NCBI RefSeq assembly: GCF_030144855.1
Contig: NC_082734.1
Location: forward strand, 12,400,001-12,464,000
Direction: 5' to 3'
DNA: 64,000 nt
Source of the DNA: Hypanus sabinus
Lineage: Eukaryota
Position 1 is the stretch's first letter. The number at the start of each line of letters is the position of its first letter. Position numbers and translations under genes: made by a program. Below are positions 12,035 to 46,264 of this stretch, piece after piece. A model generated the notes under the pieces. That model was not told where the DNA came from, ran no database searches, and saw only the letters and a list, made by a program, of their open reading frames with translations.

Positions 12035-13613
12035 ATGGCTGAGCAACTTCATAGCATCAACCTCCAGAATTTCAGCAGATCCCTTCTGGAAACATTGAAC
12101 TCACAACGTCTGGGTGGCCATTTCTGCGATGTGACAGTGCGTATCCATAACACGGCTCTCCGAGCCCACCGCTGTGTCTTGGCTGCAGCTAGCCCGTTTT
12201 TCCATGACAAACTCTTGCTAGGTTACAGTGAGATTGAGGTCCCGCCTTTGGTCTCAGCCCAGACTCTGCGACGACTGGTTGATTTTATGTACAGTGGGTC
12301 ACTGATGGTCTCCCACGTGGAAGCTCTACAGATCCTCACAGCAGCGAGTGTCCTTCAGATTAAAACCATCATTGATGAGTGTACACGAATTATTTCACAA
12401 AACGCCCCGCAAAAAGCTCAGGGGGACCAGTCATTAGCCAGTCAAAAGCTGGATCTTTCTGATGAGAAAGAAGCTGTCCTTTGCCAGACATCCGGTGACC
12501 AGATCCACAAGTTTCCCATGGGGTTCATTGAAACAACGTTGTCACCCCACTCAGCTGAGAGAGAATTTGACTTTGTTCAGGGATGCTCAAAGAACGCAGC
12601 CTCAACTGATAGCGGGTACAAAGCTGAAGAAATGCTCCCCACTCTGTGCAGGCAACAAACAGCAGCACGCCAGAAGGGAACAGGAGAGCAGGCCACGTCT
12701 GACCAGGAGAACCTGTCGCTCATGGACTCCAGTCGGAACAGTGAGGTGCGTGCACTTTGGTACAATGCTGCAGCCAACCAGCGACCCGAGGTGGGGCTGT
12801 TGCCACAAGGCAGTCACAGTCGCAAGCAGCGGCAGCCAATCAGACTCCAAATGGCTGATGGAAGTGAAGTGACCATCAAAGAGGAGGATGATGATCTTCT
12901 TTACTGTGGGGAGAACATCACTGCACAGACTGTCTCCAATCAAACCACAGAGCAGGTCAACCAGGGCGAACAGACTGAGGAAGTCCCCGAAGCAAATGCC
13001 TTTGACCCCAACCAGACTGCAGTGGGAGACCGAAGAGACTCTGGCAGTCATCTGAGTTTGAGCAACAAAGGGGAAGAGATGGAATTTTTCAATGCTAGTG
13101 ACCTCTTACCGGATGAACTGAAGTCATTCTGGCAAGGAGAGAAAGAGGAGAAGGACACTGCCATACAGCAAAATCGCAAAATGGACTGCAAGTCACAGCT
13201 TGAGGCCTCATTCCCGCGGTCTTCAACATTTATACAAGACTTCCTTCCAGGTTCTACCATGCAATCCAACCTACGTAACCAGGGCTGCTCTGCACAATAT
13301 GAAGTTCAAGGAGATGCCACCGTGGCCAGCACAACTACTCACCGCAATCTCTACCAAATTGGCCTTCCCCAGTCTCCTCACCTTCCAACGTTGGCCTCCA
13401 CTTCCCAAACCTGTATGTCCAGCATTCCGGCTCAGACAACATGTCAGAATCCCCCGGTATTCCCAGATGGAGTCCAAGCAGTGCCAGCTCCAGCTCCAGC
13501 TCCAGCCAGCCAGGTTCCCAGTGAAGCTGAGCGGAAACCCTATGGATGCACACAATGTGGGAAGACTTTCAGCTCCAGACAGAACTATGCCAAGCACATG
13601 TTTGTTCACACAG
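12035..13613 (+). CDS. ZBTB45: ZBTB45-like, coding exon 1 (BTB domain, linker, first C2H2 finger)
   Basis: LQNFSRSLLETLNSQRLGGHFCDVTVRI..AHRCVLAA.SPFF.DKLLLG matches the ZBTB45 BTB. Finger CTQCGKTFSSRQNYAKHMFVH. Acceptor TTGCAG at 12006, donor CAG|GTAGGT at 13614. Confidence 0.9.
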
Positions 13614-13682
13614 GTAGGTTCAAAGTGATTGTTCCCTTTAATTTAAACTAAGTATTTTAGGTCCTCCTATAGAAATGTTATG

Positions 13683-14093
13683 CTCCAAGAGGACCACAAC
13701 CTTGTCATTGGGTTTGGAGTCTTGTGTGCTTCAATGACCTGGATAGCTATGTAGGATGGAGTCAGGGCTTTATGCTTTGGCTCTTGGTGGGTCATTCATC
13801 CCAAACAGGTCAAAGGGTTGAGGACAGACTAAGAGTGGCCCACCGGTCCTCCAGGTTTGGGGGTCCAGCTCAGGGCAGACAACCCTGATGGTAAGATTGT
13901 TACAGAAACAGCAATGAAGAATCCGTCTACATCTGAGTGTGACGGTATTCCTGACTCTCCACCCAGGACTTGCATGACTGATAGTAGTGAAAACCACGAG
14001 GAAGCTACAGACACGATGAAGGAAGCCCTGAACACCGCCAGAGATGGAGGACCTTCATTCTTCCTGGAACGCCGGCAGTGTAATGGGCAGTTA
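13683..14093 (+). mobile_element. RTE-derived non-autonomous element (inverted copies at ~8508-8830, ~14476-14959, ~31516-31920)
   Basis: Shared 5' CTCCAAGAGGACCACAACCTTG and 3' tail GATGGAGGACCTTCATT..GTAATGGGCAGT across four copies. Confidence 0.6.
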
Positions 14094-15327
14094 CATTCCA
14101 CAGCACAGAAAGAAGCCAATCTTTATCCATGGCAGTTTTGTGTAGAGCAAGAATGTGTCTCACTTTGCTCCTCTTATCCCAGAGCCTTGCAATTCAGTTT
14201 CTCCCCCAAATGTTTAATTATTCCCTGTTTGACCTCTGTTTGTACCTTCCTCAAAGTTGGTTAATTAGTTAAAAAAAAAATAAAAACACAAAATGCTGGC
14301 AGAACTCAGCAGGCCAGACAGGAGACCTGACCTCCTGATAAAGGGTTTCGGCCCGAAACGTTGTGACTACCTCCTCCCATAGATGCTGTCTGGCCTGCTG
14401 AGTTCTGCTGGCATTTCGTGTTTTTATTTATTTCCAGCATCTGCAGATTCACTCGTGTTGCCTTTGGTTAATTAGTTACTGTTCATTACGCTGCCTGCTT
14501 TTAGGGCAACTATGAAGGTACTTCATCTCTGTTTGTCCTTGACCGTCTTCTCTATTGTGCCCCAGGTGCTATTCAGGATTCTCATTTCTGCATCTGCAGC
14601 GCAGCATCAAGTTGTCTTTGGTTTCCCGCATTTCCTCTGCCCTTCAGGGGTTCAGTGAATTGCTGTCTGAATTATGAAGTTGGCCTCTCTGCTGATACAG
14701 TCCAAAACCCAAATTTGGTCTTGGTCTTGGCAGTGTTCAGGGCTTCCTTCCATATTTATTTTACCTGTCTGGGTTGTTTGCCAGTCGAGGACCTGTGGGT
14801 CACTCTTAGCCTGGCCTCAATCCTTTGACCAGTTTGGCATGGGTAACTCTAACAAGAGTCAAAGCATAAAGACTTGAATCCAACCAACATAGCTCTCCAG
14901 ATCATTGAGACACCCGAGCCTCCAAACCCTACGACAAGGTTTTGGTCCACTTGGAGGACCTTCCTCAAAGGTAGTGATCTAAATCATACTTAGCATTTTT
15001 AGAAAGAAACTATGTCCTTGCATCCCCCTGGGATTTTTTCACTGTAACTGTAAATCTGCAAATGCTTGTCCTTGAATTATCCACTAATAACAACAGCTTT
15101 TATTTCTGTTTATCCTGCCTAAGGCTGTCAACCAAAGCTCTCAACATTCAAAAACAACCTCAGTTTCTTCATCCTAACTTTGTTACTGAAATTCCTAACC
15201 TCTACAACTGTTAAACATTTTCTGCTGGATTTTCACATCCTTCTTATGGGAACCAGAAATGGACACAAGATTCCACTTGTAGCCCTAGTAATTTATCCCA
15301 ACTTGGCAATCCATTTGTCACTATAGT

Positions 15328-15728
15328 AGGGGATATCATCAGTGCGCTGTTCACTTGTGGCATGTCCTCCAAATGCTCGGCCATTATATTCTTATCACAT
15401 AGTTGATAGGTCATCATTACAGAAACTCATTTGTGATGTAGGGAGAGGATCTCGTTGACAGATGGCTGCGTGGCAAACTCTGTGCGTTGTCTAGAATTTT
15501 TGCTCGCATTGGCTTATAAATGGGATTGAGGTCTACATGTCTGTTTATAGAATTATTTCCAGGAGGCCACACTTCTAGGAATTCTCTAGCATGCCGCCAT
15601 GACTTTCACTGATGCTCAGTCAAATTCAAGTTTCCGTAATAATGACCAGTCAACTAATTGATAAGTATATAATGGCCGAGCATTCCAAGGACACACCACA
15701 AGTGGACTGCACACTGATGGTGTCTCCT
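15328..15728. repeat. Fold-back inverted repeat: 100-bp gap-free arms (15328-15427 / 15629-15728), 201-bp spacer
   Basis: Manual alignment gives 82/100 Watson-Crick pairs, including a perfect 18-bp block AATGCTCGGCCATTATAT / ATATAATGGCCGAGCATT. Confidence 0.9.
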
Positions 15729-18700
15729 TGCATGATGACGGAATGTTTGCAAATAGATCAACCACCTGAGCTACACATTTTCCAAGTTATTTCCAAAGTT
15801 TATCCTAACATCCTTGCTTTTGTATTCCGTGTCTTTGATGTAACTACATTTACTTTGTTAATGCTCTCTCAGTAAGAACTGCCACTTTCAAGGATTTTTG
15901 TACTGTGTCCCTGGGTTCCTGAACACCATTTAAAAATGCCACACATTATAGTCTCTCCTCAATCTTTCTGCCAAACTCCATGGCCTTATACATTCCTGAG
16001 GAAGGGTCTCGGCCCAAAATATCGATTTCATCTCCATAGATGCTGCCTAACCTGCTGAGTTCCTCCAGATTTTTGCGTGTGTTGCCTTGCTTTATAGGCG
16101 TTGCTTCTCATTTGTCACCTGTGCACTTTACTTGAGCTCACTCTTAATCCCCTGAGTTCTGTGGCTTTTGCAGACTGAAATTTATCTAACTCAAAACCTT
16201 ATCTAACTCAAAACAAAACAATGGTCCCAACACTGATTCTGGGGAACAGCAATGCTAACAATCCTCCATTCTGGAAAAAAATACAACTTATTTTAATTAA
16301 TTCTATCACTATGCAATGTTATCAAGATTGGATTAAGTAATAAGTCTTAATGAATATTGGAAAATATAAAAATAAAACTCCTTCCCAACCTTTGTGACAC
16401 AATTTTTAAAAATTCTTTCCTTGATCCTTGATGAGACCCAGGCTCCAAAGATAGCAACTATCATTGACATCCAGGTGCCACAAACACTGACTGAAGAGTT
16501 CCAAAGACACTAGCTAGAATTCAGTTCCACAATCACTGACTCTAGGTGACGGATTCCCCACGCACTGACTATCTTTGGTATACGGTGTTCAAAATTAGTG
16601 ACTCTCACTTGAGGTAATATTCCACAGATGCTGACTCTCACTATGGTATAGGCTTCACTAACATCAGGATATTAGTCAACAGGCCATTGATCTGTTGGGT
16701 TCATTGGTCCACTGGATCACCTAACCTCTCTCAGTAATAACTAAAATGTGATTCATGTTGGGAACCCTACTACCGTGAGCAACTTAGGATGTGGCTCTGG
16801 GGAAATCCCTGTGACCTACCCTTTACCATGTGTTTTCTGTGAATTTGCATGGCAGCTGCATTAAATACTTGGTTCCAAAACTAAAGGAGGTAAACTTTAA
16901 CACAGGTAGTTATCTCTGTAACATCTGCTGTGACCAAAGGGATCTGGGTAACCTGTGGACAGCTGTGCCTGTTACACTCAGCAGTAACGTGGGATTAGAA
17001 GGACAAAAATTCAAAGTAGATTTTATTACCAGAGTAGATGTATGTCGCCATATACAACCCTAAGATCCATTTTCCTGAGGGCATACTCTGCAAATCTATA
17101 GAATAGCAACTAAAGCAGGATCAAGTGCAGTAGACAACAAACTGTGCAAATGCAAATATAAATAAATAGCAATAGATAGCAAGAATGTGAAACAGCAAGA
17201 TAGGGCATCCTTAAGGTGAGATCATTGGTTGTGGGAATATCTCAATGGATGGACAAGTGAGTGTAATTTGTTCAAGAGCCCGATGGTTGAGGGGTAGTAA
17301 CTGTTCCTGAATCTGCTGGTTCAAGTCCTGAGGCACTCGTACCTTCTACCTGATGGCAGCAACAAGAAGAGAGCACAGCCTGGGTGGTGAGGATCTCTGA
17401 TGATGGACCCTGCTTTTCTATGACTATGTTTCATGTAGATGTGTTCAATGGCTGGGAGGCCTTTACCCGTGATGTATGAAGAGATAACTGTTGGTGTTAG
17501 TAAATGGGGAGGAACGTGACTCTTCCAACATATGGTTCAAAGTGAGTACTGCACATGGTCAGTCCACCTTTGCAGTGTTCTCATGTTCTGAGTGTACAAT
17601 GAATCCATTCGATGTTACTGAAAAGCAAAAGATGCTTGAAGCTTGAATGGCCAGAAGCACAGATGGAAATGTATGAAGAGTTCCCCAGTTTTCAGACTGA
17701 GGAATGAACAATGAAGTAAGAACCAGTGAATTTCTTAGGTGCCTGTAAGGAAAGCAACCAGTCACAAATGTTAAAGTGCCAACAATCAAGAGTCTTATTC
17801 AAAATATTGATTGGAATTATAGAAAGACCACAGTACAGTACCACCACTGCCAACTAGCATTGTGGTTAGCACAACGTTTTATAGTACGAGTGACCTGGCT
17901 GTTCAATTCCTGCCACAGCCTGTAAGGAATTCATATGTTCTCTGGTAACTGTGTTTTCTCCAGGTGCTCTGGTTTCCTCCCACAGACCAAAGATGTACCA
18001 GCTGGTAGGCTACCTGATCATTGTAAATTGTCCCATGAATAGGCTGGTGTTATATTGGGGGTTGTTGGGCAGCGTGGCTGAAGGATTGGAAGGGCCTATT
18101 TCACGCTATATCTCAATAAATAAATAAACTCTACCAGAGCAAATCATTAGTTTCAACCCCCAACTCCTCAAAAGATAAGCAGTCACTGGGGGAAGCACCT
18201 TGTTCTTTGAGCTAGTTGTGTGGGATCTTTTATATTCATCTAAAAGAGCAGACTGAACCTTGGTTTGGCAATTAATCTGAAAGACAGCATCTTCAAGGGT
18301 GCAGCAGAGTGGAGTGTTAGCCATTTTCTAAAATTTATTGAGATTCAGCGTGGAATAGGTCCTCCTGGCCCTTCAAGCCATGCTGCCCAACGACCCCCGG
18401 TATAACCCTAGCCTAATCACAGGGCAATTTACAGTGACCAATTAACCTACCAACCGGTGTATCTTTGTATTGTGGGAGGGACCCAGAGGTAGGAATTGAA
18501 CCCCGGTCACTGGTAATGTAAAACATTGTGCGAAGTGTTATTTAAATCCATGAGCTCTTGACTTGAGTGAGAGAACTAACCAGTAATTTCTAGCATGAAT
18601 TTTTTCTTATATAGCATGGAGTAGGCCCTTCTGGCCCTTTGAGCCATGCTGCCAGAAAACCCCAACCTAACCCTAGCCTATTCATGGGGAAACCAACTAC

Positions 18701-20033
18701 CCTACTGTCCGGTACGTCTTCGGGCTGTGGGAGGAAACTGGAGCACCTGGAAAAAACACATGCGTTCACAGAGAGGACATACATGCTTAGTTCCCTCTGA
18801 GCTGTGTGGGTGCACAGCCACTTTGTAGACACACACAGTTGGAGTTTTCTTATGTATAATATTAATTTAAAGTACCACACAGTTTTCAGGCCATGTAAAA
18901 ATTTCCTGCTGAGAGCAAAAGTTGGTTTACACAACTGTTTAAAACAAAAAGAACATTGCAGAGGACGCCGGGATTGAACTCCTAACTCTTGACATCCCGA
19001 GCTGTAATGGCGTCACACTAGCCGCTATGCCACCGTTATACTATGATACAAAGAGAATGTGTAATAGGTGGAACACAAGGAATGAAAGTAAATGTTTATG
19101 TAGAATAATAGATTCCTGTGAATAATCAAGTTCAATTCTGCAAATGCTTGAAGATGTCAGTTCCTTCAAATCAGTTGTCCGCATTTGTAACACTTTGCTC
19201 ATTATTAATTTAGTTGCCATTACCAGCTCCTTGGCTGGTCTTGCAGTACTAATTGTGCAAATTCTCAGTATCTTCCCTCTCCTCTCTTGAAGGAATACAT
19301 AAACTCAGGTCTGGTGTTCTGCCAAGTCACCATCGGTCCTTTAAGCGTAGTACTTAGTTGCAGGACATCTCTCGCCAGGCCTGACATTTGACCATTTCCC
19401 AGCTGTGATGGCCAGTAGTCAGCACAGGACCTGCCTGCCTCTTGGCCTCTCCCTAACCCTGGGGTTGATGATACTACCCTCGTGCAAAGGGGGATGAGAG
19501 GCAAACTTGATCGAGGTGTGTGAGGTGATAGAGGCATAGATAGAACAGCCAACACATTTCTCCCAGGCGGCAATGGCTTTTTACCAGAAGACATCTTTTT
19601 AAGGTCATTGGAGGAAAATTTATAGTTAGGTCTGTTTACACAGAGATTGGCGGGTGCCTGGAACACATTGCCCAGGGTCACGATAGAGTCTTATACCATA
19701 GGGACATGTAAGAGACTCTTAGAAGGCACATGGATGAAAGGATACAGGGTTATGTGCTGTGTAGGAGGGAAGTGTTACATTAACCTTGGAGCAGATTAAA
19801 AAGGTTGGCACACCACTGAGGGCCAAGGGGTCGGTACTCAACTATGTTCCATGTGCGTGCAGACTCTAGGGTAGGAAGGTTTGTGTGAATTTGTGGGCAG
19901 TTTGCCTCATTTTCACACCGTTGGTGTGTTAATGCAGCTTTCACTGCTGACTTAGTGGTTTTGATCGCTGTTATTTTGTGCAGTTGAAGTCTCTGATTTA
20001 CTGACGTCTTTCCTCTCCCCACCTCCTCCGCAG

Positions 20034-20290
20034 GTGAGAAACCTCATCAGTGCAGTGTTTGCTGGCGTTCATTCTCGCTCAGGGACTACTTGATAAAACA
20101 CATGGTAACACACACAGGCGTGCGAGCGTACCAGTGCCCAGTGTGTAATAAACGCTTTACTCAAAAGAGTTCCCTCAACGTGCACATGCGGCTCCACCGT
20201 GGCGAGAAGGCCTTCGAGTGTCACGTCTGTAACAAACGTTTCTCGCACAAGACTCTGCTGGAGAGGCACATGGTCACACACATAATATAA
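20034..20290 (+). CDS. ZBTB45: ZBTB45-like, last coding exon (C2H2 fingers 2-4); total protein 611 aa
   Basis: Polypyrimidine tract plus CCGCAG acceptor; phase 1 gives [61 protein letters not shown]-stop. Confidence 0.92.
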
Positions 20291-30542: not shown

Positions 30543-32318
30543 TTCCAGGTTTGAATCCAACCGGCTCCTTAAACGAGTTCCACTGGGTTGAGCTTCGACC
30601 TAGCAACTTGGCCGCCTAAACAGACAAACGTTAAGGAAATGGCAAGGTTGCCACCTAAGCACAGGGAGGAATTTTACCTTTTTAAAAATAAAAACCATAC
30701 ACACGCAAAAACAGGGTGTTGAAACTGGAGGCGTGGGTTGCTGCTTCTGCTCACGACTCTGCTCTCTGCAGCGCTGAAACCTTGTCCTGTTCTGGCTGCT
30801 TCAGGCTTTATATCTGCAAGCCCCATGACGGTTTTCCCAACTGTGTAATGAACTGAGGCAAAGGGCCTGCCCTGGGCCTCGTGTCTGCTGCCTCACTTTA
30901 ATTCCAAAAGCCACTGTTTGCTTTTATCGTTCACACGTTATCGTTCACTCCTCTCTCTGTGCACTGGCTGTTGATCTTTGTAATTGGGTTCTTGTTTTGT
31001 GGCTGCTTGTAAGCAGATGAATCTCAAGGTTATATAATTTGTACGTTCTTTGATAATAAATGTACTTTGACTCACTCTAGTGGTGATCTTGTATGAATGT
31101 CACAGGTATCATGTAATACTTCTCACAGTTCAAGAGTATGACAATTTCACTGGCCCAGTGTTTGTTTAAATTTTGCCAAAGTTCAAGTCCATCTGTTGAA
31201 TTGATGTTATTTTCTTCTTTCCTGAAATAACAGAAAACGGATGTGACTGAAAACACCTCCATCTGAACAGCGTATCACTTGAACAAATGCCTTTGCCGTT
31301 AGCACTTTCATGTTTGTGTAATTGTTCTCTTCAACAGAATAAACAATAAAATGTGCTTTTAAAGTATTGCAAACGCAAACATGTTAGATTGATTCCCAAT
31401 GTGTGATGTTGCAACTAATTGGGCCTGAACTGATTCAAGGTTGAGTTGATTACAAGTGAAAATCCAGGCTTAATTTTTACAGCAGCTTTGTATCTGATCT
31501 ACAATAAATGTAGTTTCTGCCCGTTATTCCACTGGTATTTAGGGCAGCAATGAAGGTCCTCCATCTCCGATGATGTTCAGGGTCTCCTTCAGTGTGGCAG
31601 TAGCTTCCTCCCGGTTTTCAATACTGTCAGTCATGCAAGTGAGACTTGGGAATACCATTACACCCAGATGTGGAAGGATTCTTCATGGCTGTTTCCATAA
31701 CTATTTTGTTTTAACAGTCAGGGTCGTTAGCCCTGAGCTGAACCCCTGAACCTGGAGGACTGGTGGACCACTCTGAGTCTGGCCTCTACCTTTTGACCTT
31801 TCTCATGGATGACCAAACCAAGAGCCAAAGCATAAAACCCTGACTCCAACCAACATAGCTGTCTGGGTCATTGAGGCAGGCAAGCCTCTAGCTCACAAGG
31901 TTGTGGTCATCTTAGGAGGATCTTGCACTAACGCATGACTCAGATCGTTCGTATTTGTGTTTTGTTTAAAACCCATGGAACAACAATTGAGCTCATTCTT
32001 TGGAACAAGACATTTTGCGGTGTTGAGCCCTGGGGCAATCTGATCACTGGTATTGAACAAATCCATTTATTATTAGAGGGTGGAGGCTTTGTGTATCTGC
32101 ACCAAGTGTCTGGCACTTGTAGACAGAAGTGGCCCTCCAGTCTCAACACTGATTTTGAGTGTGTATGCTTTTTATTTTTTAAAAAAAGGTAAAATTCCTC
32201 CCCGTGCTTAGGTGGCAACCTTGCCATTTCCTTAATGTTTGTCTGTTTTAGGCGGCCAAGCTCAACCCAGGCACAAGTGGAACTCGTGCAAGGAGCAGGC
32301 CGGATTCGAACCTGGGAA
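30543..32318. repeat. Inverted pair, ~190-bp arms (30543-30731 / 32134-32318): SINE-like element plus flank
   Basis: TTAAGGAAATGGCAAGGTTGCCACCTAAGCAC..GGAGGAATTTTACCTTTTT and its reverse complement; B-box GGTT(T/C)GAATCC. Confidence 0.82.
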
Positions 32319-39879: not shown

Positions 39880-39953
39880 GTGAGCCCCGGGCTTGTGGCT
39901 CTGTCTTCGGGCAGGGGGTGGTTGGGAGAGGGGAAAAGCCGAGGTGCCGGGCT

Positions 39954-40033
39954 GCAAATGATGGTCATTCTCACGATGGTCTTCCGAATCTCTCCGGGAT
40001 GCTGAAGACAACGCCTAATGGCTTCACTGATGC
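39954..40033 (+). ncRNA. SNORD35: Box C/D snoRNA SNORD35 (U35) homologue in RPS11 intron 2
   Basis: Box C-like ATGATGG 39958-39964. Guide TCTCACGATGGTCT 39969-39982, complementary to 28S AGACCGTCGTGAGA with one G-U. D' CCGA 39984-39987, box D CTGA 40027-40030, terminal stem GCA/TGC. RPS11 is a known U35 host. Confidence 0.9.
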
Positions 40034-41508
40034 GCCTCTCTGCACACAGAGATACCGGAGCAGCGCTCTGAGCCTTGATCCGTCCTTCAGAAACCTGGAG
40101 GCTGAGCTGGATCTCGTTGCCGCAAACCTGCTCGTGACTTTAAAACTGAAATCTAGGGTCTCGGCCCGAAACGCCGAGAGCGCTTCTCCCTATCGATGCT
40201 GCCTGGCCTGCTGTGTTCCACCGGCATTTTGTGTGTGCTGCTGTTTGAATTTCCAGCATCTGCAGATTTCCTCGTGTTTGATCTGAAAGCCGGGATGTCT
40301 GCTTTGAGAAAATGCTTCCTTCTCTTCTCTCCCCCCCCCTCCCCATTATAACATGCTGGTGAGATGGCATGTGAACTTTGCTTTCGCCATCAAATACATT
40401 GCTGGGTGACCTGACTCTCAGCCCTTGCTAGCAAAAATCTGTATGTCTTAAATATCCAAAGATAATGTCAGTCCTTTGAAAGAGTTTCAAAGACTCAGTG
40501 TTAAAAGTGTGAATTCACTAATTTTCTATATAACTGAAGAATATTTTTGCTGCTTTTTAATTCCTCTCAATAAACAGTATCTTTCTTAGCTTTATAATTT
40601 GCATACCAGCCATCCGCAAATCTAGATGCATCTGCAGCCTGGTGTTCATCTATTGCCATTTACTCCTAATGTTTTGTAACAAATTTTTTTGTTATGTAGT
40701 TTTTGTTTTTATTTAAAGATCCAGTGTGGAATAGTCCCTTTCTGCTGTTCGACACCTGCCGCCAGTACCCACTAATTTTAACTCAACAGCTCTTTTATCT
40801 TCCTATTTAACCCATCGCATTATCTATATTCTCATTGTGTGCTTTCCTACCTATTTATCAACAAATTGCCATTGGTGCCTTCATCCTATTCATTAATATA
40901 TTACTGCATAAATTTTAGATGAGCTTTGAGTAAACATCATGACTTGCACTAAGCATGTATTGTCAAACATAGAACTGCACAAAACAGTGGTGAATTAAAA
41001 CATTTGCCATCATCTCATCAAATGGCAGTCATGAAGGGCTACAAGACCTGCTCCTCTTGTGCAGATGGTGTGAAGGTTGGTGATGCTCTGGTTAGATCAC
41101 ACCTGGAGTTTTGAATTCAGTTTTGGTCTCTTTATAGGAAACACATAAAAGTTTTAGAGATGGTACTGAGATTTGTCAGGATGAGGTCACATGTCAAAAG
41201 AGGAATGGTTGAGTGAGCAAGGACTCCTTTCTTTGGAGTGTAGCAGGATGACCAGTAACTTGATAGAGGTGTATAAGAGACAATGATAGATAGTGGTAGT
41301 ATATATCTTACATAAGCTACTGGAGAAACAAATTAGTATCTGATTCCCTTGTTATTCCTCTCCATAGATGCTGCTTGACGTGCTGAGCATTTTGTGTTGC
41401 TCTTGATTTCTAGCATCTGCATAACAGAATCTCTTGTGTTTATGATTCCCTAATGCACTCACTTCATAACATCACCCAGTTGTGTAATGTGTGATCCTTT
41501 GTTCCTAG

Positions 41509-44100: not shown

Positions 44101-45023
44101 CTTGGAACAAAGACATGTCATTGAGCAGAATACAGCTTTCTAGTGTAGGCCACAGCTTGAATAGTGTAACAATCATGTTCTCTTGGAAAGGCATTGTTGG
44201 TCAGTGCACCTTTTGTGGGGGAGAGGGAGCCTGTCTATGATTTTAAGAGGCAACTAAATATATTAATGAGCATAAGGTATTGATGTAGCTTGCGTGAATT
44301 CAGTAAGATCTTTGACAAGATCCACATTGGAAGGCTGATTCGAAAGATGAAAATCTCGGAGAAATTCAAGACAAGTCGCCAAATAGGATCAATATTGGTT
44401 TGGTAGTGGGACAAAGTGGATGGGGGTTACTTTAATGACTGGAAGCCAATGACCCTGCTGGTAATGACAGGATGTAGTGATAGCATGTTTGACTACAGAA
44501 TAAGGAGTAGCAAGCTGAGAAGGACAGTGGTAAATGGAACCCAATTCTTTAGCCCATCACCTCTACTGGGGCAACAGCAACTTGCAAAAGTCCTCTATAA
44601 CTGGCCAGTCTTCCAAATTGTCCCCAGATGTAGCCCATCTTCTAAGATTCTTTCTGTCCCAGGGTGGTGGTCTCCAGAGCTTCTGCTGGTGTTTCTGTAG
44701 CACTGGGTTTTTACGGTTGCTACCCCCTGCCCAACCGTCCTTTCAATATCTCTGCTTGGGACAGTTCATGGTGGAGTTTTATACATGATTGACTGGTGTG
44801 AGGTAATGTATTTTGGGAGGTCTAATAAGATAACAGTGAATGGTAGGGGCCTAGGGAACATTAGGCCAATCAATGTGTTGTCGGCAAATTTAATTAGATT
44901 CGAGCTGAGGGTGGCTGCAGGAATGGACGTCAAACCTCTACAGTTGCTGCTGTCGGGCTCTACAGTATTGAGTAAAAATACCACAGATCTATCATCAAAA
45001 GCAAGGTAAGGGCAAAGAATTAC

Positions 45024-45148
45024 CGTGATTATGCCCTTGGTACCACTGATAACTGCCTGGTTAGGAAGGTGTGTTGCCATAGTTGCAGTTAATATAGCCA
45101 TGCGTTTCCTGGAGTACTTCAGTACGATGTTCACTGTTTCATCAATAC
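45024..45148 (-). CDS. DHDH: DHDH exon 5
   Basis: GIDETVNIVLKYSRKRMAILTATMATHLPNQAVISGTKGIIT; CTGCAG acceptor, GTAATT donor, 125 nt. Confidence 0.92.
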
Positions 45149-45238
45149 CTGCAGTAATACAAGAGGAAAGGGGCATTTGTAGAGGCTTTCTGAAGTGATG
45201 GGTTTTGGACTGTGTCTCATAGAATGGTTCATACTTGC

Positions 45239-45491
45239 CTTTCTCAGTGAGGAATCCTGTAGCATGAATGGAATCTGGCTTCTCACCATTGAAAACCATG
45301 CAGGCAAACTGTACACAGTAGCAGCCAATATCCAGGAGTACTCCTCCACCCAACTCTTTCTCCACCACTCGTGGAGTCTCCAGCATCCAAGTGCCAAATT
45401 CAGCTCTCATCATTTTAACCTCCCCCACGTGATTCTCAGATAGTAGACAGCGAATCTTCTTGTAGACAGGGAAAAACCTTGACCAAAATCC
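45239..45491 (-). CDS. DHDH: DHDH exon 4 (ends at a GC donor)
   Basis: GFWSRFFPVY..EKELGGGVLLDIGCYCVQFA..GFLTEK; donor AAG|GCAAGT; 253 nt. Confidence 0.9.
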
Positions 45492-46264
45492 CTGTAAAAC
45501 AATTGAGGACCAGGGCCCACACAATGTGTTGCTTTTTAAAAATATATAAATGTGATCTTAATTTAGTCAGTAAAATTGTTTGCTTAAAATGTACAACTCT
45601 CAAGCATGTGTAGTTAGAGCCCAAAGCTACAGTGTCAGGTGTCTTGGGTACATAGTCCTCTTGGATTCCAAGATGACTTTTTGGAGTTTCCAACATTCTG
45701 GGATATTAGCTCAAAGCAGATGTATATTAAACACAATTTGTGATGATGAAAGGACTGTTGCAAATGCAGAGCTTGGCATAAATGGTTTTACTACTGTAGA
45801 GGGAGCTTTAATATGTTACTGAGGTGAGGGCAGTGCCTGGGCCAGAGTGCAAGGCTGAAGGCATATTGAAGCAGTAGGGCCTTGTGTCTGAGGACAAGGA
45901 ACAACCCAAGGTGTGAACAATTTAAGCACCAGACGAGATTGAAAAGGTCAGGGTGTTGGGCCAAAAGAGGGACAGAACAGAACAGTTGGCGAGCTTCACT
46001 CGTCTGAACTGTGGCCTTAACTGGTTCTGAGAGTGGCTGTGCTTGGCTTCATGGCTGTGGATTCCTGTTTGTGAACTTCAGTTCTGAGTGTTTTTTGCTT
46101 GCACTATTTGGATTTTTTTGGCACATTGTTTTTTTTTATATAATGGGTTTATTTAGTTTTGTGGTTGCTTGTATGGAGATGGATCTCAAAGTTATACATA
46201 AACATTGATAACAAATCCACTTTGGACTTTCACAAACAAGAGAAAATCTGCAGATGCTGGAAAT

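What the first reader, a model, noticed from the sequence alone, without database searches (positions are those of the whole stretch)
15328..15728. Unexplained 400-bp fold-back with gap-free 100-bp arms in the ZBTB45 intron
Seen: 15328-15427 pairs with 15629-15728 without any indel, giving 82/100 Watson-Crick pairs plus about 5 G-U pairs on the transcribed plus strand. The 201-bp spacer has weaker symmetric patches around the same centre (~15530): ATGGC/GCCAT, CTAGAA/TTCTAG, TATAAATGG/CTGTTTATA. I see no TSD, no recognisable TIR family and no second copy in the window. Inference: either an unclassified fold-back MITE or a long intronic hairpin. In pre-mRNA it would be ~100 bp of dsRNA, a candidate ADAR, Drosha or Dicer substrate. 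About 18% substitution with no indels is unusual for a neutrally decaying repeat.
Basis: partly seen in the sequence, partly recalled or inferred. Interest (0 to 1): 0.72.

Follow-up and report, generated by a model that had tools for sequence, protein, structure and literature searches.

The report
Old fold-back Penelope-type retrotransposon stub
The intronic hairpin is real, but it is the decayed remnant of one ancient retrotransposon insertion (492 bp, with a 15-bp target-site duplication) that sawfish, skate and electric ray lack, so it is ordinary transposon debris and not a conserved RNA structure.

Summary
The inverted repeat is confirmed: 82/100 Watson-Crick pairs plus 5 G-U, no gaps. 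It extends outward to 15306/15750 (94/122). The orthologous intron of Pristis, Amblyraja and Narcine carries an uninterrupted empty site. In the window that 15-mer is present twice (15290-15304 and 15797-15811), around a 492-bp insert (15305-15796).

The insert consists of two head-to-head copies with their 3' ends pointing outward. One copy is 46 nt shorter at its tip, and a 201-bp unique segment lies between the arms. A 15-bp duplication and a non-repeated 46-nt end exclude a cut-and-paste MITE.

The layout is the published signature of Penelope-like elements (PLEs): an inverted 5'-truncated copy plus an optional one-sided tail. The two arms taken together also fit the PLE minimal hammerhead motif at the expected place (2 of 5000 shuffles), although neither arm alone is intact.

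Arm mismatches are strand-symmetric (8 G-U, 9 A-C, 11 others). The two duplication copies differ at 3 of 15 positions. Both point to neutral decay.

No second copy, Rfam match or homologue was found. Interest is low. The window matches Hypanus sabinus.

The parts
15290..15304 (.). Left copy of the 15-bp target-site duplication (AATTTATCCCAACTT)
   Evidence: The 15-mer occurs once in the orthologous intron of Pristis (L001 12181-12195), Amblyraja and Narcine, and twice in the window.
15305..15427 (-). Left arm: inverted, 5'-truncated copy (sense on the minus strand) with the shortened tip. It ends 46 nt earlier than the right copy.
   Evidence: Gap-free pairing with 15629-15750, 94/122. The insertion boundary comes from the empty-site alignment.
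15306..15345 (-). Decayed minimal-hammerhead-like core of the left arm. The CTGATGA box is intact at 15337-15343 (minus strand); four other core positions are changed.
   Evidence: Either-arm descriptor test, 2/5000 shuffles. Sequences printed.
15428..15628 (.). Central 201-bp unique segment. Most likely it is the further 5' part of the longer of the two copies. It has no symmetry of its own.
   Evidence: 29/101 complementary, p = 0.23. Sliding identity falls to chance at 15428. No ORF is present.
15629..15750 (+). Right arm: direct copy (sense on the plus strand), the part that pairs with the left arm.
15711..15750 (+). Decayed minimal-hammerhead-like core of the right arm. The box reads CTGATGG at 15714-20, followed by one bulged base, a G...C-closed stem and GGAA. 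Two core positions are changed.
   Evidence: The descriptor follows Cervera & De la Pena 2014 (PMC4209133).
15751..15796 (+). One-sided 46-nt 'tail': the extension of the right copy that has no partner in the left arm. It is AC-rich and has no poly(A) or microsatellite.
   Evidence: The inverted repeat stops at 15750, but the insert runs to 15796 according to the empty site. A PLE tail of 30-40 bp is described in PMC8557442, PMC3846280 and PMC11167929.
15797..15811 (.). Right copy of the 15-bp target-site duplication (AGTTTATCCTAACAT)
   Evidence: It matches the left copy at 12/15. All three differences are derived relative to Pristis.
13614..20033 (+). Host intron between the BTB/first-zinc-finger exon (12035-13613) and the last zinc-finger exon (20034-20290)
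   Evidence: The spliced translation equals the Hypanus sabinus protein P0127 exactly, 611 aa.

Best explanation
This is one ancient, dead insertion of a Penelope-like retrotransposon (PLE), reduced to its terminal-repeat region.

Shown: a 492-bp block was inserted into this intron in the stingray lineage after it split from sawfish, skates and electric rays. The insertion duplicated 15 bp of target. The block is two copies of the same sequence, head-to-head with their 3' ends outward. One copy is 46 nt shorter at its 3' tip.

Inferred mechanism, from published PLE biochemistry: the element's GIY-YIG endonuclease cut both target strands 15 bp apart. Each freed 3' end primed reverse transcription of element RNA. 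The two syntheses began at the two alternative internal start sites, which accounts for the one-sided 46-nt 'tail'. Both cDNAs were 5'-truncated, at about 123 nt and up to about 369 nt, and were joined in the middle. That left two inverted arms and a 201-bp unique loop.

Each arm once carried the element's minimal hammerhead motif. Its CUGAUGA box holds the ATG of the element's ORF, so the arms end 11 codons into that ORF and the tail ends 26 codons in. Since insertion the copy has decayed neutrally.

As part of the pre-mRNA it will still fold into an imperfect dsRNA of about 120 bp. That is a by-product of its origin, not a selected function.
For: Single insertion and TSD. Window 14958-15304 and 15797-15851 align to adjacent, overlapping positions in Pristis (L001 11800-12195 and 12181-12236). 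Base-level alignments show the 15-mer once in Pristis, Amblyraja and Narcine and twice in the window.

Architecture. The left arm starts exactly at the insertion boundary, and the right copy runs 46 nt past the repeat. This matches published PLE structure:
- Inverted pLTRs, a 31-bp tail at the 3' end of one of them, a TSD, and a pLTR ending 12 aa into the ORF, or 22 aa with the tail (PMC3846280).
- A PLE protein that cleaves and extends both strands and starts RT at two adjacent internal sites that define the tail (PMC11167929).

Hammerhead. If either arm's base is allowed at each column, the arms fit the PLE min-HHR descriptor: a CUGANGA box, one bulged base, a G10.1-C11.1-closed helix II, GAAA, a 2-nt helix III, UH, and a 3-bp helix I. 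The fit is on the sense strand, just upstream of the 3' ends. Only 2 of 5000 column shuffles give any hit on either strand. The strict descriptor gives 0 hits in 140 kb of real batoid DNA on both strands. 'Dual min-HHRs 100-700 bp apart on opposite strands' are described for truncated PLEs (PMC4209133); here they are about 380 bp apart. The reading frame from the ATG inside the box stays open to the end of both copies.

Neutral decay. Arm mismatches are 8 G-U, 9 A-C and 11 transversion-type. The TSD copies differ at 3/15, against 18-23% for the arms.

Leads only, not evidence. AI notes on the same genome report very many PLE inserts as 'tail-out inverted pairs with 13-16 bp TSD and one shortened tip'.
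Against: There is no sequence homology to any PLE. No other copy was found in the window or in three outgroup loci, about 140 kb in all. A metagenome pattern scan was blank. There was no protein hit for the arm ORF, and the insert has no RT or GIY-YIG coding remnant.

Rfam finds no hammerhead, even at E <= 10 on the element alone. Neither arm alone satisfies the descriptor. The descriptor was also written after I had seen the CTGATGA box.

The tail is 46 nt, longer than the published 30-40. The TSD of 15 bp is longer than the 8-10 bp reported in rotifers.

Arm divergence (JC 0.21-0.27) is as large as, or larger than, the window-Pristis intron divergence (about 0.18-0.20). That is awkward for arms that were identical at an insertion younger than that split. 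It requires a faster stingray rate, arms that were not identical at insertion, or an insertion very soon after the split.

The outer 34 nt are more diverged than the inner 88 (38% against 17%, p = 0.017). This is unexplained.
Confidence: 0.7

Rival explanations
1. A fold-back insertion made by another reverse-transcribing element (a LINE such as CR1/L2, or a SINE). Target-primed reverse transcription would be followed by snap-back or template switching of the cDNA onto itself, giving two inverted copies of the 3' end and a loop.
For: A 15-bp TSD and 5' truncation are typical of any target-primed insertion. Snap-back synthesis would also give outward 3' ends and a unique loop. No homology ties the element to a PLE.
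Against: There is no poly(A) or microsatellite 3' tail. The one-sided tail and inverted copies are stated to be absent from non-LTR TPRT (PMC8557442). The hammerhead-like core sits on both arms in the right orientation. Known LINE 5' inversions join different parts of the element, not the same part twice (own knowledge of L1 twin priming).
Confidence: 0.17
2. A class II fold-back MITE. This would be a non-autonomous cut-and-paste transposon with long terminal inverted repeats, for instance Tc1/mariner-like, because the well-matched part of the arms begins with CAGTG.
For: It has long inverted arms and a short non-coding body. CAGTG at 15340 and CACTG at 15716 resemble Tc1-type ends. This was my starting guess.
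Against: The empty site places the ends at 15305 and 15796, not at CAGTG/CACTG. The repeat continues 34 nt outside CAGTG. The right terminus has 46 nt with no inverted partner, so the true termini are not inverted repeats. A 15-bp TSD lies outside the 2-11 bp range of known DNA-transposon superfamilies (own knowledge of the Repbase classification). No TA flanks the ends.
Confidence: 0.03
3. A hairpin RNA kept by selection. Whatever its origin, the intronic dsRNA of about 120 bp would be maintained as an ADAR, Drosha or Dicer substrate, or as a regulator of the host gene.
For: The predicted fold is very stable (z = -13). There are no indels in the arms, P about 0.01-0.06 under the local indel rate. 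A predicted alternative last exon ends immediately upstream, so the hairpin may lie in a 3' UTR.
Against: It is absent from three batoid outgroups. There is no Rfam family. The mismatch classes are symmetric between the strands, 8 G-U against 9 A-C. The arms have diverged as much as the neutral TSD copies and the intron. The pairs are already 18-23% broken.
Confidence: 0.05

Closest known systems
Penelope-like element insertions with inverted pseudo-LTRs and an optional 'tail' (e.g. Pen2a_Av of Adineta vaga, Poseidon PAc of Anolis; PMC3846280, PMC8557442, PMC11167929)
   Same: Two head-to-head copies of the terminal repeat lie inside one TSD. A short extension is present at the 3' end of only one of them. 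Both copies are heavily 5'-truncated. A hammerhead-type core overlaps the ORF start, and the repeat ends about 11-12 codons into the ORF (22-26 codons with the tail).
   Different: No ORF body lies between the repeats, so this is only a stub. The tail is 46 nt rather than 30-40. The TSD is 15 bp rather than 8-10 bp. Both hammerhead cores are mutated. No sequence similarity to any PLE could be shown.
Dispersed minimal hammerhead motifs of truncated PLEs (Cervera & De la Pena 2014, PMC4209133)
   Same: Two motifs lie about 380 bp apart on opposite strands. There is a bulged base after the CUGAUGA box, a G10.1-C11.1 closing pair, and a helix III reduced to 2 nt.
   Different: Neither motif is intact here. 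The fit needs the better base from either arm at six core positions. Positions 15.2/16.2 are not palindromic. Helix I has only 3 bp.
Inverted-repeat Alu pairs in primate introns and 3' UTRs (ADAR substrates)
   Same: A transposon-derived intramolecular dsRNA of about 100-300 bp inside a pre-mRNA, made of two oppositely oriented copies of one retroelement.
   Different: Here both arms come from a single insertion event, not from two independent insertions. No editing data exist for it.
Fold-back MITEs / class II fold-back elements
   Same: Short, non-coding and almost entirely inverted repeat.
   Different: The termini are not inverted repeats, the TSD is 15 bp, and one end is asymmetric. See the membership test.

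Membership tests
Penelope-like element (PLE) insertion | Inverted, 5'-truncated copy adjacent to a direct copy (head-to-head, 3' ends out), made in one insertion event | tested here: met
   The arms 15305-15427 (-) and 15629-15796 (+) lie inside a single TSD. Three outgroups have the empty site.
Penelope-like element (PLE) insertion | Optional 30-40-bp 'tail' extension at only one end | tested here: met
   15751-15796 (46 nt) is present only on the right copy. It is slightly longer than published values.
Penelope-like element (PLE) insertion | Target-site duplication from staggered cleavage | tested here: met
   15 bp, 12/15 identical, present once in the outgroups.
Penelope-like element (PLE) insertion | Hammerhead ribozyme motif in the terminal repeat, on the sense strand | tested here: inconclusive
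   The either-arm fit to the min-HHR descriptor gives 2/5000 shuffles. Neither arm alone fits, and Rfam finds no hammerhead.
Penelope-like element (PLE) insertion | RT plus GIY-YIG ORF in this copy | tested here: not met
   This copy has only short ORFs interrupted by stops.
Penelope-like element (PLE) insertion | Sequence homology to an autonomous copy that has the RT plus GIY-YIG ORF | not testable with these tools
   Homology could not be tested.
Penelope-like element (PLE) insertion | Multi-copy family in the genome | not testable with these tools
   There is no second copy in 64 kb plus 76 kb of outgroup loci. That amount of sequence says little about a genome of several gigabases.
Class II MITE / fold-back DNA transposon | Inverted repeats at the very termini of the inserted DNA | tested here: not met
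   The right terminus (15751-15796) has no inverted partner. The insertion ends are defined by the empty site.
Class II MITE / fold-back DNA transposon | Short superfamily-specific TSD (TA, TTAA, 3, 8 or up to about 11 bp) | tested here: not met
   The TSD is 15 bp. The range of known superfamilies is from my own knowledge.
LINE/SINE insertion | 3' poly(A) or simple-repeat tail next to the TSD; single orientation | tested here: not met
   The 3' end reads ...TTATTTCCAA with no A-run or microsatellite. Two inverted copies are present.
Structured RNA gene or miRNA-type hairpin | Orthologous conservation, compensatory changes, or a match to a curated family | tested here: not met
   It is absent from Pristis, Amblyraja and Narcine. 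There is no Rfam match. Mismatch classes are strand-symmetric.

The most novel reading that the evidence does not exclude
The fold-back lies in the 3' UTR of an alternative, truncated isoform of the host gene (BTB domain plus one zinc finger) and influences that isoform. The Hemitrygon akajei isoform X2 model ends in an exon that maps to window 15124-15288, directly against the insertion. In the window the same frame would stop at 15324-15326, inside the element, and the first AATAAA is at 16371. A 120-bp dsRNA there could drive ADAR editing, nuclear retention or Staufen-type decay. That would set the ratio of truncated to full-length transcription factor in stingrays only.
Probability: 0.05. 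Interest if true: 0.5.

Novelty: new member of a known kind. Interest (0 to 1): 0.2.

Why it matters
For the scan, it removes a candidate 'unexplained structured RNA'. It also gives a practical rule: for a fold-back with no visible TSD, check the orthologous empty site, because PLE inserts carry a one-sided tail that moves the TSD tens of bases away from the repeat.

Biologically it is one clean, outgroup-verified example of the head-to-head-plus-tail product predicted by the two-strand cleavage and dual RT start sites shown in vitro for an Anolis PLE. It comes from an elasmobranch, and all of its junctions can be read.

It has no demonstrated effect on the host gene.

Tried and rejected
- **Tc1/mariner MITE with CAGTG ends** (my first guess). 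Rejected by the empty-site boundaries and the 15-bp TSD.
- **tRNA-derived SINE head** (the arm has a GGCCGAG...GGACT look). ARAGORN finds nothing; dropped.
- **Rfam.** No hit on the region at E <= 1 or on the element alone at E <= 10, apart from chance C/D-box scores. The whole window has no hammerhead.
- **Simple CTGANGA...GAAA pattern.** Not enriched in the window: 10 hits against 7 expected.
- **Second copies.** None by blastn with word size 7 or by nhmmer with an arm profile, in the window plus L001-L003.
- **Exact 25-base pattern in JGI metagenomes.** 0 hits.
- **Protein search with the 87-aa ORF over the right arm,** hoping to catch family copies in Logan contigs. No candidates.
- **Pfam on the ten longest other ORFs of the window,** looking for a PLE RT to use as bait. 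Only an oxidoreductase exon turned up.
- **Ingroup orthologues** (Hypanus, Hemitrygon, two Mobula, and the shark Mustelus). Gene tables were returned, but no DNA, because 'the sample's file is too large'.
- **Reads.** There are no expression, editing or small-RNA data.
- **Earlier findings.** The search of earlier findings by place-near, by sequence and by relatives was blank.
- **Spacer symmetry.** At chance level.
- **Excess of A/G differences on the sense strand,** as a trace of editing before insertion. My hand count from the mismatch list gives 12 A/G against 5 C/T. I judged this too small a sample to pursue and ran no formal test.

Full report
**1. The observation**

The inverted repeat is present as described. 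A gap-free comparison of 15328-15427 with 15629-15728 gives 82 Watson-Crick pairs and 5 G-U pairs. The repeat finder extends the arms to 125 nt at 77%. Inside the insert defined below, 94 of 122 positions are complementary (p about 3e-33). As RNA, 15300-15760 folds at -193.7 kcal/mol, 13 standard deviations below shuffles.

The symmetric patches in the spacer are at chance level (29/101, p = 0.23). A target-site duplication does exist.

**2. Host gene and genome**

12035-13613 is an exon encoding a BTB domain and a first C2H2 finger. 20034-20290 encodes three more fingers. Splicing them gives a 611-aa protein identical to Hypanus sabinus XP_059809632.1 (P0127). The distance from the ATG to a far downstream alternative exon (19,216 bp) also equals the gene range recorded for that species. 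The window is therefore almost certainly Atlantic stingray.

NCBI calls the gene 'ZBTB20-like'. The nearest tetrapod relatives are ZBTB45. The fold-back lies in the 6420-bp intron.

**3. The empty site (the key result)**

I fetched the orthologous loci of Pristis pectinata (L001), Amblyraja radiata (L002) and Narcine bancroftii (L003).

- Window 14958-15304 aligns to L001 11800-12195, and window 15797-15851 aligns to L001 12181-12236. The flanks are therefore adjacent in the sawfish and overlap by 15 bp.
- At base level, Pristis has AGTTTATCCTAACTT once. The window has AATTTATCCCAACTT at 15290-15304 and AGTTTATCCTAACAT at 15797-15811.
- Amblyraja and Narcine show the same uninterrupted site.

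So 15305-15796 (492 bp) is a single insertion in the stingray lineage with a 15-bp TSD. All three differences between the TSD copies are derived relative to Pristis.

**4. Anatomy of the insert**

- The left arm begins exactly at the left boundary (15305/15306).
- The repeat stops at 15750 on the right, but the insert continues to 15796. One end therefore carries a 46-nt extension with no partner.
- Read in the sense that ends at each outer boundary, the two arms are the same sequence in head-to-head orientation with their 3' ends outward.
- Pairing falls to chance abruptly at 15428 and 15628, so the 201-bp middle is unique sequence.
- There is no poly(A) and no microsatellite, and there are no ORFs of note.

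**5. What this excludes**

The true termini are not inverted repeats, and the TSD is 15 bp. Both are incompatible with a cut-and-paste MITE. That includes the Tc1/mariner reading suggested by the CAGTG/CACTG motifs at 15340 and 15716, which lie 35 and 80 nt inside the real ends.

A local inverted duplication of host DNA is excluded because none of the 492 bp exists in the outgroups. An assembly artefact is excluded by the 18-23% divergence between the arms.

**6. What it matches**

Published descriptions of Penelope-like elements fit point by point.

- Craig et al. 2021 (PMC8557442) report high 5' truncation. [quoted passage not shown] - Arkhipova et al. [quoted passage not shown] Their pLTR ends 12 aa into the ORF, or 22 aa with the tail, and head-to-head is the commonest arrangement.
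- Frangieh et al. 2024 (PMC11167929) show that a purified PLE protein cleaves and extends both DNA strands, unlike R2 and L1. It starts reverse transcription at two adjacent internal sites, and the interval between them is the tail.

The insert here is what that biochemistry predicts. Two nicks 15 bp apart each prime a cDNA, one from each of the two start sites. Both cDNAs are truncated and then joined.

**7. Hammerhead trace**

PLE terminal repeats carry a minimal type I hammerhead (PMC4209133).

- The left arm (minus strand) has an intact CTGATGA box.
- The right arm (plus strand) has CTGATGG at the equivalent place.
- After the box, both arms have one extra base, a stem closed by G...C, and a purine-rich GAAA-like stretch.

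I coded the paper's descriptor and allowed either arm's base at each aligned column. This gives one hit, on the sense strand. Only 2 of 5000 column shuffles give any hit on either strand. The strict single-sequence descriptor finds nothing in 140 kb of real batoid DNA on both strands.

The right arm departs from the core at two positions and the left arm at four, so neither is a working ribozyme. Rfam finds no hammerhead. The two boxes are about 380 bp apart on opposite strands, within the 100-700 bp reported for truncated PLEs.

The ATG inside the box opens a frame that stays open to the end of both copies: 11 codons to the short tip and 26 to the tail end. This parallels the 12 and 22 codons of the rotifer element.

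I rate this as suggestive, not proven. The descriptor was written after I had seen the box.

**8. Neutral decay or maintained hairpin?**

The 28 mismatches in the arms split into 8 that leave G-U on the transcribed strand, 9 that leave A-C (G-U on the other strand) and 11 transversion-type. There is thus no bias towards keeping pairs in the pre-mRNA. The TSD copies differ at 3/15 (20%), the same as the arms (18-23%).

The absence of indels is only mildly unusual: P = 0.06 for 100 nt and 0.013 for 122 nt, using the indel rate of this intron against Pristis.

Two points remain unexplained.
- The outer 34 nt are more diverged than the inner 88 (38% against 17%, p = 0.017).
- Arm divergence (JC 0.21-0.27) is not smaller than the window-Pristis intron divergence (about 0.18-0.20).

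Either the insertion closely followed the split, or stingray rates are higher, or the two cDNAs were not identical when made.

**9. What could not be done**

There are therefore no reads, no expression, editing or small-RNA evidence, and no k-mer copy count.
Presence in other stingrays is untested. Similar CDS spans in Mobula (8193 and 8093 bp against 8256 bp here) hint that it is shared.
- No homologous copy was found anywhere I could search. Assignment to PLEs therefore rests on architecture plus the hammerhead trace, not on sequence similarity.
- Earlier AI notes on this genome describe very many PLE inserts as tail-out inverted pairs with 13-16-bp TSDs and one shortened tip. They agree with this reading but are leads, not evidence.

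**10. Verdict**

This is an old, non-coding, head-to-head Penelope-type insertion stub. I give about 0.7 to PLE and about 0.17 to some other reverse-transcribed fold-back. It would form imperfect dsRNA in the pre-mRNA as a by-product.

The only slightly unusual angle is that a predicted alternative last exon (the Hemitrygon isoform X2 tail maps to 15124-15288) abuts the insertion. The hairpin may therefore lie in a 3' UTR, which would need RNA data to test.

Noticed in passing
window 15124-15326: A predicted alternative terminal exon lies directly upstream of the insertion. The C-terminal 52 aa of Hemitrygon akajei isoform X2 (P0125) map here, after an AG acceptor at 15122-15123 with a pyrimidine tract. 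In the window the same frame runs through the left TSD copy and stops at 15324-15326, inside the element. The first AATAAA downstream is at 16371.
   Followed up: partly
window 14958-15304; L001 11990-12195; L002 12200-12412: The intronic block just upstream of the insertion is conserved across batoids (69-73% identity). Translations in one frame look similar (TFKENNL.FF..L.LK...ATVK). It may be an old conserved alternative exon or an ancient repeat.
   Followed up: partly
window 14299-14408 (wider 14278-14429): A second, near-perfect hairpin in the same intron has 23-bp stems around a loop of about 60 nt. It scored as a chance Rfam 'Plastid-psbJ-4' match on both strands. Its arms have several short matches in the Amblyraja and Narcine loci, so it is probably a small MITE-like repeat family.
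   Followed up: partly
window 16026-16078: A short repeat with multiple matches at unrelated positions in the Pristis and Amblyraja loci. It is an unclassified dispersed repeat.
   Followed up: no
window 16182-16214: Two exact tandem copies of a 16-nt unit, TTATCTAACTCAAAAC, spaced 17 nt apart.
   Followed up: no
window 39953-40039 (+): A SNORD35 box C/D snoRNA (Rfam 58.9 bits, E = 3e-11). It lies where the neighbouring RPS11 (Ribosomal_S17) gene begins in the Hypanus gene table, as human SNORD35B does in RPS11.
   Followed up: partly
window 31236-31250 (+): A tiny exon encoding ...NGCD-stop, used by the Hypanus and Hemitrygon isoform X2/X3 models of the BTB gene. It lies 11 kb beyond the gene's normal last exon. 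The ATG-to-here distance (19,216 bp) equals the Hypanus sabinus gene range, which supports the species assignment.
   Followed up: partly
window 44769-45557 (-): An exon-sized ORF with a GFO/IDH/MocA oxidoreductase C-terminal domain (Pfam E = 2e-19), probably a dihydrodiol-dehydrogenase-like neighbour gene.
   Followed up: no
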